From Hormiphora californensis (taxonomy: Eukaryota > Animalia > Ctenophora): DNA of 64,000 bases. The notes under the pieces were generated by a model. The model did not search any database. It was not told the DNA's origin and saw only the letters and a program-made list of their open reading frames with translations. The translations under genes and the position numbers were made by a program. The DNA is taken from the NCBI GenBank assembly GCA_020137815.1, contig CM035350.1, forward strand, positions 6,138,001 through 6,202,000, in the 5' to 3' direction. Positions 2,155-48,100 of this stretch are shown here, piece by piece. The first letter of the stretch is position 1, and every line of letters begins with the position of its first letter.

Positions 2155-11368
<9,214 letters not shown>

Positions 11369-40218: not shown

Positions 40219-40429
40219 CCTATTAGCGATGAAATGTTCAGTAAGCATGTAAATGAATAAATAATATTGATTTCGAAATTCCAAGTCAATATAGTCTCAA
40301 TACAGTCTCGCCCTCACTCCCCCACAGGTCACAGCCCCCAAGGGCCATGAATATGAATATGAATATGAACTTCACAATGTATATCGAGTCAATATAAAGA
40401 AAATATATGACTCTCCCGCTCTTACACTA

Positions 40430-42103: not shown

Positions 42104-42562
42104 TATACGTATAAAATATAGTTAAAAATTAAGTACATTAATATACGCTTCCAGGCCGAGGCTAATAGCACAACAGCAGTTACCTAAAGCGGGACAAACA
42201 CACACAGACGAACCAATGAGACTGGTAACAATGAGCTGAGAGCCAAACGGACAGATAGATTTAACCAGATTTAATAAATTACTAAAATCGAATAGAAAAA
42301 GGCGAATAAGTTAGTTAAAAATACGGTAGTTACAAAACACCACCACACATACACACAATACAATACAATACAATACAAAATATAAATTTATAATCCGCTT
42401 TTCAACTGTCCGTATTTACGGCACAGCACAAGTTCTGCTGCTGGGAGTCAGATTCATCGTCACATCCTCTTTCATCCTCAACAGCCCTCGCTCCAAAAGC
42501 GGCTAGCTTTACAGCAAGATTATGAAGTAATAGTTTATGTAGGGGGCATTTATAATATAGCT

Positions 42563-43507
42563 CTATCCTACTTGGATTATATTGTTTTTGATGTAGTACT
42601 TTCCGCCCGGGTCCTCTAAGCGGAGCTTTTTCAAGGTATTTATAAGGGCTTTTCGCTCCTTAATTTGGATCGGTGTTAAATCTGGCGACAAGTAAACAGC
42701 TGCGAAATATTCCGAGGTCTTGAGCTGTCGCGACTTTTTCAGCAGCGCCATAAGTGTTGCTCGTCTTTCAAATGAAACCAAAAGTGGTCGAGGGCCCTTC
42801 TCGTTTTTCTCGCCGATACGTTTCATAGCGTGAACTTTCGGTTTTTCGTTCAGCTCAGCAAACAAACCATCAACACTGGTCTTGGTCAAGCGGTCAGTTG
42901 TTTCAGGAATACCGAAAATAACAAGGTTTTTATCCCTCTCTGACAATGGTGCGTGAGTTGGTTCTTGAGAAGATTTTCTCACCACTGGAGAGACTGCAGC
43001 ATAGTTTTGAGCAAGTACAGTAGAGTAAGCTTTCACCTTCTGCACTGAAGTTGTCATTGAACTGAGTTGCTCCTGTTGGTTGTTGATCAAGGTTTGTTGC
43101 AGCTCGATCACCGTAACACGGTGGCGGTCAAGTTCTTCTTTACACTTACTCAACTGGTCTTCTAGTTTCCTCGTACTACTAACCTCATCAAGGCTAAACA
43201 TTGAACACTTCAGAAGTTTCACAACGGACAAAAATGTTTTACACGTAGTGTCAATGATTTCCTCTTTAGATAAGTTCTTGAGAATACGTCTAAAGTGAGA
43301 GCATATTTTGTCACCAGGTGAACCAAGTTTTGACTCAGGGAATTGTTTGATAAAGTTGTAACTATTCGTTACTTGTTGCGGTTCAAAAGTTATCTCTTCC
43401 GAGGTATCCTCGTAATCCATTCTCATAATTTCCATAACATGGTCGTTCACTGCTTTTATCAATCGTTCTCTCGTAGGGTTATCGCCCTCGTTGTCTTTCG
43501 TTCCCAT
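42563..43507 (-). CDS. LINE ORF1-like protein (CR1/L2-type; coiled coil plus RRM-like/C-terminal domain)
   Basis: 314 aa uninterrupted from ATG 43507. Coiled coil followed by ERDKNLVIFGIPE, RIG..PRPLLVSF and VYLSPDLTP..ERKAL, typical of non-LTR ORF1 proteins. Confidence 0.85.
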   Translation of the reverse strand: MGTKDNEGDNPTRERLIKAVNDHVMEIMRMDYEDTSEEITFEPQQVTNSYNFIKQFPESKLGSPGDKICSHFRRILKNLSKEEIIDTTCKTFLSVVKLLKCSMFSLDEVSSTRKLEDQLSKCKEELDRHRVTVIELQQTLINNQQEQLSSMTTSVQKVKAYSTVLAQNYAAVSPVVRKSSQEPTHAPLSERDKNLVIFGIPETTDRLTKTSVDGLFAELNEKPKVHAMKRIGEKNEKGPRPLLVSFERRATLMALLKKSRQLKTSEYFAAVYLSPDLTPIQIKERKALINTLKKLRLEDPGGKYYIKNNIIQVG

Positions 43508-43527
43508 CACTACCTAGAGGCTCACGC

Positions 43528-43565
43528 CTCAGATTAATTTGTTTAAAGTAGTGTTGAAAAGTTTG

Positions 43566-43569
<4 letters not shown>
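43528..43569 (-). other. Second genomic spliced-leader copy (1 mismatch), at the 5' end of the ORF1 element
   Basis: Minus strand GTTTCAAACTTTTCAACACTACTTTAAACAAATTAATCTGAG, then GCGTGAGCC...; no GT donor. Confidence 0.85.

Positions 43570-43632
<63 letters not shown>
43569..43632. repeat. (CA)n microsatellite abutting the SL copy
   Basis: About 32 CA units seen directly. Confidence 0.95.
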
Positions 43633-43634
<2 letters not shown>

Positions 43635-44020
43635 GGGCACCGGCCAAGTCTCGAACTATTGACGTAAAGTAACCCATACCCAAGTCCCAAAGCCTGATAT
43701 TAGTATAATATCACACACTGTATGTCCCTCCTTGTGGGGATGCATGCGAGGGGACTCGGGAGTCGGGGTTGCTAACATGCCAACGAAAAAAGAAAAACTG
43801 AAAAACGGCCATCTTGGATTCTGATATATTTCAAAGTATGAAATTCGATTATCTTAGCGCCGCCAAACGTGCCGCGCACGATGTGTTGGCTCACGCGCGC
43901 GTAAAAAGCTAGAAAATGTCAAATTTTTTGATCTGTCCGAATCTTCTTTTTCAAAAAAATCTCGGTTTCTCTTCGAATTCAGCCGGTAACGGCTTAAGAG
44001 GTCTACGTACAGGATTTAAC

Positions 44021-44900
44021 ATGAACTTGGACGGTAAACTACTCCCTTACCATGTATTGGCCACCTGGTATATCCACATTGTATCGTTGGCGGCACTCCT
44101 GTGCTACGGAATAACAATGTACTACGAGTTTGAGGACTCAACTGCAACTGTGTGTCATGTCTGGAACCTCTTACCCTCATTTTCATCTACTGTTGGAAAC
44201 TATACACCCCAAAGGTGACTTTGTGCAATAATATAATTCAAAATAGCAAATTTGTGTCATGTCGGTTCTGAATTTACTACGTTACACTGCTACATTTAGA
44301 CCTTCTATTGAACACAGGTACATCTGGAGACTACTTGTAGGAGTTTCCTGTGTCATGCGATCCCTCGCAGTTTGGATGTTCTACAAAAATCTCCAGCGGT
44401 TTCAGAAACAGGGTGCACTTGTGTTTGCTTTCAGTTGTCTGCGGAGTCTAGAAATCTTTGGTGGGTATAATAATCAAATAATGTATTCATTCGTACATGT
44501 CATTTTCATGAACATTCTAGAGCTTGACGTGTATTCTGTTCTTGCAGGTCTCCTTCTCTTGACAATGTTTGCCTCCACGGAAGTGTTCCCTCTCCATGCC
44601 TTTGGTTTCAGCCTCTTTTTCTTCTGCTCAACTGTCAACATTTTCGCGGTATCGAGGTTGTTACACAACGGAGTCACGGGATCTGGACTAATAAACAGAC
44701 AGACAGTATATTTCCCACTAATTTATATCATTACCTTCCTGGGGTGTTTTGTTTCCTACATAGTGCACGATTGGTACTGCATCAGTGGAGTTTACACTAT
44801 TTTTGGTGCCCTGGAACTTATTATGATATTTTCAAACATCATGTTTTGGACACACTGTGATGCGCTCGACTGGAGAGGCTATACTATTTCCATCGAATAA
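44021..44900 (+). CDS. PGAP2: Post-GPI attachment to proteins factor 2 (Frag1/DRAM/Sfk1 family)
   Basis: Exons 44021-44214, 44318-44460, 44548-44900. CHVWNLLPSFSSTVGNYTPQRYIWR and HDWYCISGVYTIFGALE; multi-TM. Confidence 0.85.
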
Positions 44901-45131
44901 TAATTGATGTAGTAATTATTATCTGAATTAATTAGATCTATTTATAATTATGAGTGTATTTTATTATCTTTGATTGATATATTTGATTGGCTGTTTACTT
45001 TATCCCCACCATCCGACCCAATTAACATTTCCAACCCTCACTAACTGACACCCTGCTCTCTTGATCGTCACTATTCGTTTATTCTCCCGATTGGCTGATA
45101 ATATTCTTTGTTTACTCTGATAGGTCATACC

Positions 45132-48100
45132 ATGGTGGCCAAGGATAAAAAACCTAAAAAATCCCGACCTTCATCCGCTACCAAAAAAGACTCAGAGAAC
45201 ACCGTCTGCAGTATACCAGAGGATGCCAGCGTGACAACAGATACAGAGAGTACTATCCTAGGAGCCGTTGTATTCCTGCTATCATGCGGAGTGTATTGTC
45301 TCACTATGTACCCTGGCCTACCCATGGGGGATAGCGGGGAGTTCATGGTTACCAGTATAGACTTTGGGGTATCCCACCCTCCCGGGTATCCCCTTTTTAC
45401 AACACTGTGTTATGCGGCCATTAATTTGATACCACTTGGTTCCCCTGCCTGGCGGATTAACCTCTTGTCAGTGCTATTCGGGGCGTTGTTTAACCTTGTT
45501 ATTTTCCTACTTGTCAGTAAAATTGGAAGAAACAGTATTGTAGGGCTACTGACTGCCTGCTGGATTGGATTTTCTCGTCTCTTCTGGATGTGGTCAATTC
45601 AAGGCGAGATTTTCTCTCTCAACAACTTTTTCTGTGCTCTTCTCATGCTCCGAGCGTACTATTTCGAGGCGGCAGTAGAGCGAAATGAGGTGTACCGGCA
45701 AGCTAAGATATCCGCTTTGGTTAGTGGTCTCTCCCTTTCTAACCAGCACACTTCAGTCCTCTACATCGCTCCCTTTGCCTTGCGTGTGGCATACAGAACA
45801 CTTATAACTGAGAAGCACGGTATAGCTGATGCGGTGAGGATCTCACTGTGCGGTCTGGTGGGAATGTCATGGTATCTTCAGATGCCACTCTCTAACTTCC
45901 TCGTTACCCCTCGAGTCACATGGGGTGATTTCAGTTCCTTTCACAACCTTGTTCGACACATGCTGCGTCTCGATTACGGGAGTTCTTTTGTCCTCGTGGC
46001 TGGTACTAGCAAGAGCACATTTTTCCAGAACTTTGCAGCTTTTTTCCGAGATTCATCAACAGAACTCTCGTTTGGAACGTGGTGTTGTGCCATGTTTTTG
46101 GTAGCCACGGCCCTCAGAAACTCGGCCTCTCTCCCTAAAAGGGTGCTGTGTGTTATTCTCAGTATGCTGGCGTGCTATTTCGCTGTGTTTTGTACCCTGG
46201 CCAATATTGATCTGAGTGAAGGCGATGGACTAAGTAGGGGTGTCTTGGAGAGGTTCTGGATGCAACCCAGTGTTGGACTTATCGTGGTAGCGGGGGTTGG
46301 ACTTTGCAAACTTCTTCTCTTTCTCGCAGCCCGGGTCCACTGTATCTTCAGTAACAAAGGATTTCAACTTGTTCTGGCAGTTGCCCTGATCTCGGTGCAG
46401 GTCCAAAAGAACTACGCAGAGAACAATGAATCAGATAACCACTACTCTCTTCACTACGCCAACTCTATCCTCCCCATCCTGCCCCCTAACAGCCTAATGT
46501 TAACTGGGGGTGATCTACCTACTAACGTGTTCCGGTATCATACCATCTGTGAGCAAATCAGGCCTGATGTCCGCGTTCTCGACATGCAATTCATGGCCGC
46601 GGATTGGTTCAGAGATGTCCTGGCCCCCACGACGTTCACTGGTGTAAACATACCGGGGGTTTACCGGCCCTACAAAACAGACAAACTGAAAACTGGACAG
46701 TACAATTTGGCCGTTTTTCTGGAGAAGAATATTGACAAGTTTGATATTTTTGTGTGTAACAGTGTGAGATCGGATGAGACATCGCACCAGGAGAATTTCT
46801 ATATGATCCCTGTTAGGACCTGTAAACAGTTCATTCGGAAATCTGATCGCAACCCTGTCGAGGTAAAAATAATTAATTGGTTAATTAGTTAATTATCGGT
46901 AGATTCAGGTTCTAGTTCAGTTTCGGCTCTTTGAAAGTGTAGAAACAATAAACGCGTGTTACACTTTGCTGACATTTTCCATAGAAAGCATAGCTGATTC
47001 CGCTAGATACGAAACTGAACAAAATTGTTTACACTATTGCCACGCGCACGCAAAACTATTTTCCAGAACAGTCACTACTATTGTGCAGAGTTTCGTTCTG
47101 CTACAGTCACTACTATTGTACAGAGTTTCGTTCCAACATGTTCCCAACTAACACTACCCAGCACACCCTTCCTCCCCAGGTTGTTGATAAATACCCTGCC
47201 ATCAAGCTAAACGAGTGGCCCATGCCCCCACTTCACCAGTACGAGGATCGGACCTGGGAACATACCCTCATGCTGACCTATATCAACTCCCTGGGGGAGC
47301 GGGGGAACATGCTCTGGCTGGCTGCTGTAGCAACCACCCACACCCAGAACAGACGGTACCTTCTGGAGCACGGTCTGGTGAGGATGGAGGCTGGGGTGAA
47401 GGAGTTTGAGAGGGCGGTGGAGAGTGGGTTGTTGAAGGAGGATGATTGGAGCCTGGCTTATGATCATCTGGGCAAAAATATGGGACATTTCTGTATGATC
47501 CTTCGGTGGTTGGTAAGTATAGAGGGTCTCTTTTGAAAAGAGGTAGAGAGAGAGAGAGAGAGGTAGAGAGATAGGGTATTGGGAGGGGATAGAGAGAAGG
47601 TCTTTCCTGCAGGGGGTCAAGGGAGGGAATGGACCATAGGGAGGAGGGGGGGGTGTATCGAGAGAGTAATGAAACTTGATTGTTGTTGAAGGTCAGTATT
47701 TTATGGGAGAGTAGTAACTGCTGTCAGAGACTGATAAATACCAATGCTCATAAATAAGTAATTAGCTGGCCGGTGGGCTACTGGTTATGAATTTATGAGA
47801 AAATATTAAAGGAGGGATAATACTTCCCTGTGAGTGGTTGCTCTCTCTTTCTATGGAGGCAGCTGGGGCCGGCATAATGTAGTAGTGGAACCAATTGTCT
47901 TGACCCATGATTAATGAACATAGAGAGAGGGAGAGAGAAAGAGGGGGATAGAGTAATGAGTATTTCCGCGAGCAGACTCCGGGAGGGAGAATGGGAGAAA
48001 GAACGGGGAGACTGAGACAACAAAACAGACAGAGAAAAAGCAATCCAAATTAACTTGTATATTATTCAGGTTGAGCAAGATGGTGACCAAAAGATTATGG

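What the first reader, a model, noticed from the sequence alone, without database searches (positions are those of the whole stretch)
42356..43632. Spliced-leader-capped, ORF1-only retroposon inserted in a TG microsatellite
Seen on the minus strand: a 42-nt copy of the spliced leader, then 20 nt later an intact 314-aa LINE ORF1-like gene. A short 3' UTR and a (TATTG)4 tail follow, with (TG)n upstream and TG-rich DNA downstream. There is no ORF2 (endonuclease/RT) and no GT donor after the SL. Known: SL exons are added to mRNAs by trans-splicing in ctenophores; CR1/L2 LINEs end in short tandem tails; ORF1-only 'half-LINE' (HAL1) elements exist in other animals. Inference: the element's RNA was trans-spliced and reverse-transcribed to full length, so its 5' end is host SL rather than an internal promoter. 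It could be a non-autonomous family mobilised by a partner LINE that uses host trans-splicing or a genome-encoded SL for capping/translation, possibly preferring TG repeats. I do not know of such an element being described in ctenophores.
Basis: partly seen in the sequence, partly recalled or inferred. Interest (0 to 1): 0.9.

Follow-up and report, generated by a model that had tools for sequence, protein, structure and literature searches.

The report
Spliced-leader-capped ORF1-only retroposon family
A 1.2-kb jumping gene in a comb-jelly genome carries only a LINE-type RNA-binding protein gene and begins with a DNA copy of the host's trans-spliced mRNA leader, so its RNA was matured by host trans-splicing before a partner LINE, which shares its 3' end, most likely copied it back into the genome.

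Summary
On the minus strand lie (TG)33, a 41-nt copy of the published Hormiphora californensis spliced leader (SL; 1 mismatch), a 20-nt 5' UTR, an intact 314-aa ORF, a 3' UTR and a (TATTG)4 tail. The window holds no reverse transcriptase (RT).

The ORF folds as a coiled coil plus RRM like human L1 ORF1p (Z 11.3), though Pfam does not recognise it.

The element is one of at least 17 copies. All 13 copies that reach the 5' end start with an SL. Near-identical copies carry different leaders (SL-A or a second leader, SL-B) joined at three different AG acceptor sites. The head is therefore acquired anew by trans-splicing at each retroposition. It is not inherited, not an SL gene, and not a targeted insertion.

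Only 15 of 408 genomic SL-A copies are real SL RNA genes.

An endonuclease/RT LINE shares the last ~171 nt (87%) and the (TATTG)n tail, so it is the likely mobiliser. Its own ORF1 is unrelated.

dN/dS is about 0.19. The ORF1-only superfamily has at least 125 copies, mostly intact, with varied 3' modules.

A preference for TG repeats is not supported.

Other agents of this scan already found SL-headed retroelements elsewhere in this genome. I found no published description.

The parts
43569..43633 (.). (TG)33 microsatellite directly upstream of the element. It is the target-site DNA. The G at 43569 may be the first base of a 42-nt leader.
   Evidence: TRF: period 2, 33 copies, 100% matches.
43528..43568 (-). 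DNA copy of the host spliced-leader exon (SL-A, 41 nt, T>C at position 36). It ends exactly at the position of the SL donor site and is not followed by the SL intron.
   Evidence: published SL; true SL genes continue with GTAAGCTGAG.
43508..43527 (-). 20-nt 5' UTR, GCGTGAGCCTCTAGGTAGTG. It contains two internal AG acceptors (CTCTAG| and GGTAG|) that other copies use as alternative SL junctions.
   Evidence: 9 copies share junction a; L033 has junction b; L038, L040 and L041 have junction c.
42563..43507 (-). Intact ORF of 314 aa plus stop codon. It has a poorly predicted N-terminal part, a long coiled-coil helix (residues 81-172) and an RRM with a short C-terminal extension (190-314), as in L1 ORF1p.
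   Evidence: Foldseek: top 11 hits are human L1 ORF1p, E 4e-6; 2w7a Z 11.3, rmsd 2.3 A, 87 aligned; 2ykp_A Z 10.6, 121 aligned; dN/dS median 0.19.
42526..42562 (-). Proximal part of the 3' UTR, specific to the family and absent from the partner LINE.
   Evidence: homology to the LINE starts at 42525.
42376..42525 (-). 3' UTR module shared with the autonomous APE/RT LINE (about 87% identity). It has a conserved predicted closing stem, UAGCCGCUUUU/AAAAGCGGNUA, and a terminal hairpin. It is the presumed recognition element for the LINE reverse transcriptase.
   Evidence: predicts the structure and finds no compensatory changes, so the structure is unproven.
42356..42375 (-). (TATTG)4 tail. The repeat number varies between copies, and the tail is identical to that of the partner LINE.
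42338..42355 (.). TG-rich 3' flank (TGTGTATGTGTGGTGGTG on the minus strand), the remainder of the microsatellite target. A target-site duplication cannot be delimited inside the repeat.

Best explanation
The feature is a fixed insertion of a non-autonomous non-LTR retroposon. The element encodes only an L1-ORF1p-like protein (coiled coil plus RRM).

Shown: its 5' end is a DNA copy of the host spliced leader. Shown by comparing copies: the leader is attached anew in each cycle, from either of two leader variants and at any of three AG acceptors. The RNA that was reverse-transcribed had therefore been SL trans-spliced. The reverse transcription ran to the 5' end, or nearly so, since some copies lack 2-14 nt of the leader.

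Inferred: the element is mobilised in trans by an APE/RT LINE. That LINE would recognise the 3' UTR module and (TATTG)n tail that both elements share, as SINEs are mobilised by 'stringent' LINE partners. The element's own ORF1p coats or chaperones its RNA in cis, which would explain the purifying selection on the ORF.

Inferred, less certain: SL-headed copies need no promoter of their own. Read-through transcription from neighbouring host promoters would be followed by trans-splicing at the AG that ends the genomic leader copy (...TTTGAG|GCGTGAGCC). This would regenerate the same capped, translatable RNA.

The (TG)n site is incidental.
For: SL identity:
- The 41-mer is the published leader and the exon of the true SL genes.
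- Only 15 loci have SL-A followed by the GTAAGCTGAG intron, against 408 SL-A 41-mers in the genome.
- The flanks upstream of the leader copies are all different.

Family:
- At least 17 copies exist.
- All 13 copies that reach the 5' end carry an SL.
- The leaders are truncated at the 5' end by 0, 2, 3, 4, 7 or 14 nt.

Re-acquisition of the leader:
- L039, L040 and L041 have identical CDS and 3' UTR (dS = 0), but their heads are SL-A/junction a, SL-A/junction c and SL-B/junction c. Their flanks and tail lengths differ.
- Each of three clades with 100/100 support mixes SL-A and SL-B and different junctions.
- Junctions b and c lie directly after AG dinucleotides of the longer form.
- SL-B is a second leader with 139 genomic copies and one locus with a GTAAG donor.

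Protein:
- 10 of 12 ORFs that could be examined are intact, and dN/dS is 0.13-0.25.
- The fold matches L1 ORF1p.

Partner LINE:
- L061-L065 encode APE and RT (RVT_1 E 1e-34).
- They share 171 nt of 3' UTR at about 87% identity, plus the (TATTG)n tail.

Generality:
- At least 125 scored ORF1 copies exist out of 716 candidates, about 110 of them without stop codons.
- On contig C1, 13-14 of 16 5'-complete copies have SL-A or SL-B just upstream.
- A JGI metagenome contig holds a whole element with SL-B and 9 further nt upstream of the leader.
Against: - No RNA evidence for this family could be obtained. Only Logan contigs were available. The one run labelled as RNA from this species covered only the leader.
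- Mobilisation by the LINE rests on 3'-end sharing alone. The 3' structure shows no compensatory changes, because the sequences are too similar.
- No clear target-site duplications were found.
- The junction between (TG)n and the SL in the window is not covered by independent reads.
- The re-splicing (promoter-less) step is untested. An unsampled master copy with a native acceptor, or promoter activity of the leader DNA itself, would explain junction a equally well.
- The shared homology among the fetched full-length-like partner LINE copies does not begin at an SL. The only exception is an SL-B lying 247 nt upstream in one copy, which I could not read.
Confidence: 0.82

Rival explanations
1. 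The leader is an inherited part of the element. On this view it acts as an internal promoter or initiator, as the SL exon does in some SL RNA genes. Transcription would start at its first base, and no trans-splicing would be needed.
For: All 13 5'-complete copies have a complete or nearly complete leader. No master copy lacking an SL was found. That intragenic promoter elements exist in nematode SL genes is my own knowledge and was not tested here.
Against: Copies with identical bodies carry SL-A or SL-B and three different junctions. Inheritance cannot produce this pattern. The retro-copies lack the conserved upstream block (tgggaggc...ccatcagcaG) of the true SL genes. This does not rule out that the leader DNA adds some promoter activity.
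Confidence: 0.08
2. The reverse transcriptase switched template from the element RNA onto SL RNA or onto another capped mRNA, as in U6/L1 chimeric pseudogenes. The element RNA itself would not have been trans-spliced.
For: Template switching at RNA 5' ends is known for LINE reverse transcriptases (my own knowledge). Leaders are found on many unrelated retroelement families.
Against: The junction always lies exactly at the exon end of the leader (GAG|). No SL-intron sequence and no foreign mRNA sequence is ever present. On the element side the junctions fall only after AG dinucleotides and at the same three positions in independent copies. Switching would give scattered breakpoints.
Confidence: 0.04
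3. The element inserts site-specifically into SL RNA genes, like CRE, SLACS, CZAR and NeSL-1. On this view the leader is flanking target DNA.
For: SL-targeting non-LTR elements exist in trypanosomatids and nematodes (my own knowledge; PMC3636483 is listed).
Against: The upstream flanks are unrelated to one another and to the SL gene promoter. No SL-gene 3' part follows the tail. The partner encodes an APE-type endonuclease, not an RLE-type one.
Confidence: 0.02
4. The ORF belongs to a host (domesticated) gene family that is dispersed as ordinary processed retrogenes. It would not be a mobile-element family with a dedicated partner.
For: Purifying selection is strong (dN/dS about 0.19) and the fraction of intact copies is very high. 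L1TD1 is a precedent for a domesticated ORF1 gene (PMC4161310, listed).
Against: There are hundreds of copies, some of them identical and recent. No poly(A) tail is present. Instead the copies carry LINE-specific 3' modules and microsatellite tails: (TATTG)n, (TATTGA)n, (TTA)n, (TATGTT)n and (ACATTT)n. The 3' module is shared with an APE/RT LINE.
Confidence: 0.04

Closest known systems
HAL1 ('half-L1') elements of mammals (PMC5753468: a non-autonomous derivative of L1 that encodes only ORF1p and arose several times)
   Same: It is a non-autonomous non-LTR retroposon that keeps an ORF1p-type gene (coiled coil plus RRM) under selection. It lacks ORF2 and depends on a LINE for endonuclease and RT.
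   Different: It is not a deletion derivative of its partner. The partner LINE's ORF1 is of the PHD...CCHC type and is unrelated. Only about 171 nt of 3' UTR and the tail are shared. The 5' end is the host SL rather than an L1 5' UTR promoter. Related subfamilies carry different 3' modules and tails.
SL-tagged retrogenes of dinoflagellates (PMC12014239: retrogenes carry DNA-encoded remnants of the SL at their 5' end)
   Same: A DNA copy of the trans-spliced leader at the 5' end of a retrocopy is the signature of reverse transcription of a trans-spliced RNA.
   Different: Here the tagged units are self-propagating retroelement families in an animal, with LINE-type tails instead of poly(A). No tandem relic leaders were seen, because re-splicing at the leader's terminal AG would leave none.
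SL trans-splicing of transposon transcripts in Hydra (PMC12220107: about 30% of TE Iso-Seq reads carry an SL)
   Same: Host SL trans-splicing acts on transposable-element RNAs in a non-bilaterian animal.
   Different: That report concerns transcripts. As far as I read it, it does not describe genomic copies headed by the leader, which is the feature seen here.
SINE/LINE pairs with shared 3' tails ('stringent' recognition; PMC5786205: the SINE tail originates from the LINE 3' region and is recognised by the LINE RT)
   Same: The non-autonomous element shares the 3' UTR module and the short tandem-repeat tail with an APE/RT LINE. Different subfamilies carry different 3' modules.
   Different: The element is protein-coding and about 1.2 kb long. 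Its head is a pol II-type trans-spliced leader, not a pol III small-RNA head.
CRE/SLACS/CZAR/NeSL-1 site-specific retrotransposons of SL genes
   Same: Spliced-leader sequence lies next to a non-LTR retrotransposon.
   Different: Those elements insert into SL genes, so the leader is target DNA. Here the leader is part of the inserted cDNA and the flanks are unrelated.

Membership tests
Retrocopy of an SL trans-spliced RNA | The 5' end is the SL exon, ending exactly at the donor position, without the SL intron. | tested here: met
   In the window GAG|GCGTGAGCC follows the leader, whereas true SL genes have GAG|GTAAGCTGAG.
Retrocopy of an SL trans-spliced RNA | The leader is joined at 3' splice-site (AG) positions, independently in different copies. 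| tested here: met
   There are three junctions. Junctions b and c lie directly after CTCTAG and GGTAG of the longer form. SL-A and SL-B alternate within clades. The acceptor used for junction a was not seen in a copy lacking an SL.
Retrocopy of an SL trans-spliced RNA | Transcripts of the family carry the SL. | not testable with these tools
   Only Logan contigs were available.
HAL1-like ORF1-only non-autonomous LINE derivative | It encodes an ORF1p-type protein and has no ORF2. | tested here: met
   The ORF is 314 aa. The tail lies about 190 nt after the stop codon. The window contains no RT. The same layout occurs in the other copies and subfamilies.
HAL1-like ORF1-only non-autonomous LINE derivative | It is derived from its autonomous partner by loss of ORF2, so ORF1 is homologous to the partner's ORF1. 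| tested here: not met
   The partner's ORF1 region has a PHD finger and CCHC knuckles. tblastn with the 314-aa ORF finds nothing in L061-L065.
L1 ORF1p / Pfam Transposase_22 | Match to the family HMM, or sequence similarity to solved L1 ORF1p. | tested here: not met
   Pfam gives no hit at E <= 1 other than noise. A profile search against PDB sequences does not find L1 ORF1p.
L1 ORF1p / Pfam Transposase_22 | Architecture of coiled coil, then RRM, then C-terminal domain. | tested here: met
   The AlphaFold2 model has a helix at residues 81-172 and an RRM at 190-276, followed by a helix and hairpin up to residue 314 (pLDDT about 85). Human L1 ORF1p is the top match: 2w7a at Z 11.3, and 2ykp_A at Z 10.6 with 121 residues aligned, including part of the CTD. 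Generic RRMs score at most 8.7. The CTD is shorter than in L1. Trimerisation was not tested.
Non-autonomous retroposon mobilised through a shared LINE 3' end (stringent type) | The 3' UTR and tail repeat are shared with an autonomous LINE that encodes endonuclease and RT. | tested here: met
   171 nt are shared at about 87% identity, plus the (TATTG)n tail, with L061-L065 (RVT_1 E 1e-34; Exo_endo_phos_2).
Non-autonomous retroposon mobilised through a shared LINE 3' end (stringent type) | A conserved 3' stem-loop supported by covariation, and trans-mobilisation shown experimentally. | tested here: inconclusive
   A conserved structure is predicted, but none of its 34 pairs shows a compensatory change. 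Mobilisation needs an assay.
SL-gene-specific retrotransposons (CRE/SLACS/NeSL) | Insertion within SL gene units, with SL-gene sequence on both sides. | tested here: not met
   The flanks are unrelated to SL genes and differ between copies.

The most novel reading that the evidence does not exclude
These ctenophore retroposons may have given up promoters altogether. A genomic copy headed by the leader would be transcribed by read-through from host genes. It would then be trans-spliced again at the AG that ends its own leader copy, which regenerates a capped, translatable, full-length RNA in every cycle. A superfamily of ORF1-only elements with hundreds of intact copies would use this route and swap 3' UTR/tail modules to exploit different LINE reverse transcriptases. 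If so, most of the 'spliced-leader loci' reported for ctenophore genomes are retroelement heads, and SL trans-splicing is a host function on which a whole mobilome depends.
Probability: 0.4. Interest if true: 0.85.

Novelty: new variant of a known kind. Interest (0 to 1): 0.75.

Why it matters
Non-LTR retrotransposons face a 5'-end problem, because each new copy must carry or find a promoter. This family points to another solution: host trans-splicing defines the 5' end, so each copy may not need to carry its own promoter. The copies themselves record this, through alternating leaders and alternating junctions on identical bodies.

The result also changes how a published genome feature should be read. 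The H. californensis paper counted 718 leader copies and treated them as leader loci (PMC8527503). Only about 16 loci look like SL RNA genes. The rest that I sampled are heads of retrocopies.

The work also defines a large ORF1p-like protein family that has no Pfam model, with 10,267 clusters in the global protein library. It gives a tractable case of a protein-coding non-autonomous element that borrows 3' ends from LINEs.

For annotation, leader copies in the genome cause artefactual 'shared first exons'. They should be masked as repeats.

Tried and rejected
- Pfam on the ORF gave only noise (DUF3829, CCDC28) and no Transposase_22 hit.
- A profile search against PDB sequences did not find L1 ORF1p. 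The resemblance is at fold level only.
- Rfam found nothing in the window at gathering threshold.
- SL-headed families that begin with a CUGAUGA-stem-GAAAC motif gave no hammerhead hit at E <= 0.1. Only sub-threshold miRNA-model hits appeared, caused by head-to-head inverted copies. I therefore do not claim hammerheads.
- TG-repeat targeting is rejected. Only the window copy and one partner-LINE copy (L061) lie in TG/CA-rich DNA, which is 2 of 14 3' flanks.
- Target-site duplications: none were recognisable.
- SL at the partner LINE's 5' end: a pattern joining the leader end to the start of the shared LINE sequence found nothing. One copy (on C2) has SL-B 247 nt upstream of the shared region. 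The true 5' end of the partner LINE therefore stays open.
- Reads: only Logan contigs were available. The repeats at both ends were skipped. There is no proof of expression and no test of whether an empty allele exists.
- Derelle et al. 2010 is not held in the library, so I could not compare SL-B with published Pleurobrachia leader variants.
Full report
**Observation**

Read on the minus strand, the region has the following layout:
- (TG)33 at 43633..43569.
- A 41-nt block, TTTCAAACTTTTCAACACTACTTTAAACAAATTAATCTGAG, at 43568..43528.
- A 20-nt spacer, GCGTGAGCCTCTAGGTAGTG.
- An ATG at 43507 that opens an intact 314-codon frame. The stop codon is at 42565..42563.
- About 190 nt of 3' UTR.
- (TATTG)4 at 42375..42356.
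- TG-rich DNA after the tail.

No shuffle of the window produced a match to the 41-mer, while the real window holds two matches. The window has no RT and no second copy of the ORF.

**Is the 41-mer the spliced leader?**

The genome is 110.7 Mb in 45 contigs. Its size and its leader sequence fit Hormiphora californensis. The genome paper gives the trans-spliced leader as GAGTTTCAAACTTTTCAACACTACTTTAAACAAATTAATTTGAG. It found the leader on 56% of Iso-Seq reads and counted 718 genomic copies (PMC8527503). The window block differs from it by one T>C.

Genuine SL RNA genes can be recognised in the genome. They have a conserved upstream block (tgggaggc...ccatcagcaG), then the leader, then GTAAGCTGAG and a conserved intron with a U-rich Sm-like site. 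They are often arranged as divergent pairs.

Only 15 loci have the leader followed by this intron. By contrast there are 408 matches to the 41-mer with at most 2 mismatches. In 29 other sampled copies the sequence before the leader is always different. The sequence after the leader falls into many families, most of which open an ORF within 5-70 nt.

**The element is a family, and the leader is its 5' end**

The 1.17-kb body has at least 17 relatives in the genome at 82-95% identity, plus more distant ones. All 13 copies that reach the 5' region begin with a leader, at unrelated genomic sites. The leader is complete in some copies and lacks 2, 3, 4, 7 or 14 nt at its 5' end in others. This is the pattern expected from reverse transcription that stops just short of the RNA end.

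The junctions are the most informative feature. Three exist:
- (a) GAG|GCGTGAGCCTCTAGGTAGTGATGGG.
- (b) GAG|ATAGTGATGGG.
- (c) GAG|TGATGGG.

Junctions b and c lie directly after the AG of CTCTAG and of GGTAG in the longer form. They are therefore alternative 3' splice sites.

Some copies carry a second leader, SL-B (TTTCAAACTTTCATCAACTACAACGTAAAACTATTTATTGAG). SL-B has 139 genomic copies and a single locus with a GTAAG donor.

L039, L040 and L041 have identical coding sequences and 3' UTRs (dS = 0). Their heads are SL-A/a, SL-A/c and SL-B/c, and their flanks and tail lengths differ. In a maximum-likelihood tree of the bodies, each of three clades with 100/100 support mixes SL-A with SL-B and mixes junctions.

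The head is therefore not inherited with the body. It is added to the RNA anew before each insertion. This excludes three alternatives:
- An element-borne leader.
- Targeted insertion into SL genes. The flanks are not SL genes.
- Template switching. That would give scattered, non-AG breakpoints and would bring in SL-intron sequence.

The window copy has a terminal branch of 0.019 and 1 change in its 41-nt leader. The two figures are consistent with each other and with an insertion that is not recent.

**The protein**

Pfam and PDB sequence searches do not place the ORF. An AlphaFold2 model was built from 14 family members. It gives a long helix (residues 81-172) and a confident alpha/beta domain (190-314, pLDDT about 85) with RRM topology plus a helix and hairpin.

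Foldseek's 11 best PDB matches are all human LINE-1 ORF1p (E 4e-6). VIA-align scores:
- 2w7a: Z 11.3, rmsd 2.3 A, 87 residues aligned.
- 2ykp_A: Z 10.6, 121 residues aligned, extending into the CTD.
- Generic RRMs: at most 8.7.

The protein works like an L1-type ORF1p. Membership of Pfam Transposase_22 is not met.

Ten of the 12 frames that could be examined are intact. Pairwise dN/dS is 0.13-0.25, with a median of 0.19. The protein has therefore been under selection throughout the spread of the family.

**The partner LINE**

The last ~171 nt of the 3' UTR and the (TATTG)n tail recur, at about 87% identity, at the 3' end of young elements that are 95-99% identical to each other. These elements encode an APE endonuclease and an RT (RVT_1 E 1e-34).

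A common structure is predicted for the shared module: an 11-bp closing stem and a terminal hairpin. The sequences are too similar to show covariation.

The LINE's own ORF1 region has a PHD finger and CCHC knuckles and is unrelated to the 314-aa protein. The element is therefore not a 'half' of this LINE. It is a separate ORF1 gene joined to the LINE's 3' recognition module. Mobilisation in trans is an inference from this sharing.

**The wider picture**

A profile of the ORF finds at least 125 scored copies out of 716 candidates in the genome. About 110 have no stop codon, and their open frames are 315-345 aa, so they are stand-alone genes. On contig C1, 13-14 of the 16 5'-complete copies have SL-A or SL-B just upstream.

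Other subfamilies have the same layout (leader, short 5' UTR, ORF1, 135-200-nt 3' UTR, tail). Their 3' UTRs are unrelated, however, and their tails differ: (TATTGA)n, (TTA)n, (TATGTT)n and (ACATTT)n. This suggests exchange of 3' modules between lineages.

Relatives occur in Pleurobrachia bachei gene models and in many marine metagenome or metatranscriptome contigs of 1.1-1.7 kb. One JGI contig holds a whole element with SL-B and 9 further nt upstream of the leader.

Other agents of this scan had already reported leader-headed LINEs, CRE-like and Penelope-like elements elsewhere in this genome. My results agree with them. They add the ORF1-only class, its partner LINE, and the evidence from alternating leaders.

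**What is not supported or not shown**

- A preference for TG repeats is not supported (2 of 14 3' flanks).
- No target-site duplications were seen.
- Expression is not shown. The reads tool returned only Logan contigs. The run labelled as RNA from this species covered only the leader. The repeats at both ends of the element were skipped.
- The source of transcription is unknown. The 5' end of the element lies about 350 bp from the start of a divergently oriented Frag1/DRAM-like gene, so a shared promoter region is possible.
- Junction a occurs with both SL-A and SL-B, and no master copy without a leader was found. I therefore favour read-through transcription followed by re-splicing at the AG that ends the genomic leader copy, at about 40%. 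This is an inference.

**Literature**

Full-text searches found three relevant reports:
- The H. californensis paper, which treats the genomic leader copies as leader loci.
- A Hydra paper reporting leaders on about 30% of TE transcripts.
- Work on SL-tagged retrogenes in dinoflagellates.

I found no description of leader-headed retroposons in ctenophores. The library lacks many subscription papers, so this absence is not proof of novelty.

Noticed in passing
window 6958-6998 (minus strand) and downstream to about 6560: A second SL-A copy (canonical sequence) heads a different element that starts CCCGATGAAGAGGTAGATCCTCGAAAC. The same family occurs at L004. A long (GA)n microsatellite follows at about 6560-6700. 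Several leader-headed families start with a CUGAUGA-stem-GAAAC motif reminiscent of a hammerhead core, but Rfam gave no hammerhead hit.
   Followed up: partly
G000:C13:2741193-2741239; genome-wide: A second leader, SL-B (TTTCAAACTTTCATCAACTACAACGTAAAACTATTTATTGAG), has 139 genomic copies, but only one is followed by GTAAG. That locus is a candidate single SL-B RNA gene. SL-B differs from the single leader sequence quoted in the genome paper.
   Followed up: partly
G000:C13:3181658-3195356; C5:6431347-6432001; C9:4528291-4528868; C11:221863-222517; C12:4023264: There are only 15 genuine SL-A RNA genes (leader plus GTAAGCTGAG intron, with a conserved upstream block). They occur as divergent pairs about 550-630 bp apart and as one cluster on C13. 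The published count of 718 'leader sequences' therefore consists mostly of retrocopy heads.
   Followed up: yes
L011 1421-1583; L014 1452-1565; L023 1400-1590: Leader-headed copies lie head to head, with their leaders abutting in inverted orientation. They form long perfect hairpins that score against plant and animal miRNA-precursor models below gathering threshold.
   Followed up: no
window 42174-42193 and 40346-40428: These are remnants of another retroposon 3' module (CCCGCTTTAGGTAACTGCTG...AGAGCGGG), just downstream of the element. The same module, with tails (TATTGA)n, (TTCATT)n or (TAAACT)n, ends several other families.
   Followed up: partly
G000:C8:6713415-6717339 (L034 and L055): This family copy, headed by SL-B, is split after about 125 nt by a nested 2.7-kb insertion that encodes an RT about 30% identical to the partner LINE's RT.
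   Followed up: partly
G000:C2:9041109-9041543: One copy of the partner LINE has an SL-B ending 247 nt upstream of where the fetched LINE copies begin to align. The full-length LINE may itself be headed by a leader. A related LINE family (about 70% identity) has SL-B about 360 nt upstream of the equivalent point in several copies.
   Followed up: partly
window 43916-44900 (+) and 45108-46892 (+): The neighbouring host genes are Frag1/DRAM/Sfk1-like (Pfam E 1.2e-9) and TMEM260-like (E 3.3e-28). The first starts about 350 bp from the element's 5' end, in divergent orientation.
   Followed up: no
protein library (P0026-P0171): The ORF1-like family has 10,267 clusters at E <= 0.001 in the global protein library. 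Most members are 280-350 aa, lie on contigs of 1.1-1.7 kb, and have no Pfam domain and no name. It is a large family that is not yet described.
   Followed up: partly
L006 371-1459 (minus strand); L071 and L073 downstream of the leader: Other leader-headed elements open with ORF1s of the PHD-finger type (Pfam PHD E 5.6e-9). Leader capping is therefore not restricted to the ORF1-only class.
   Followed up: partly
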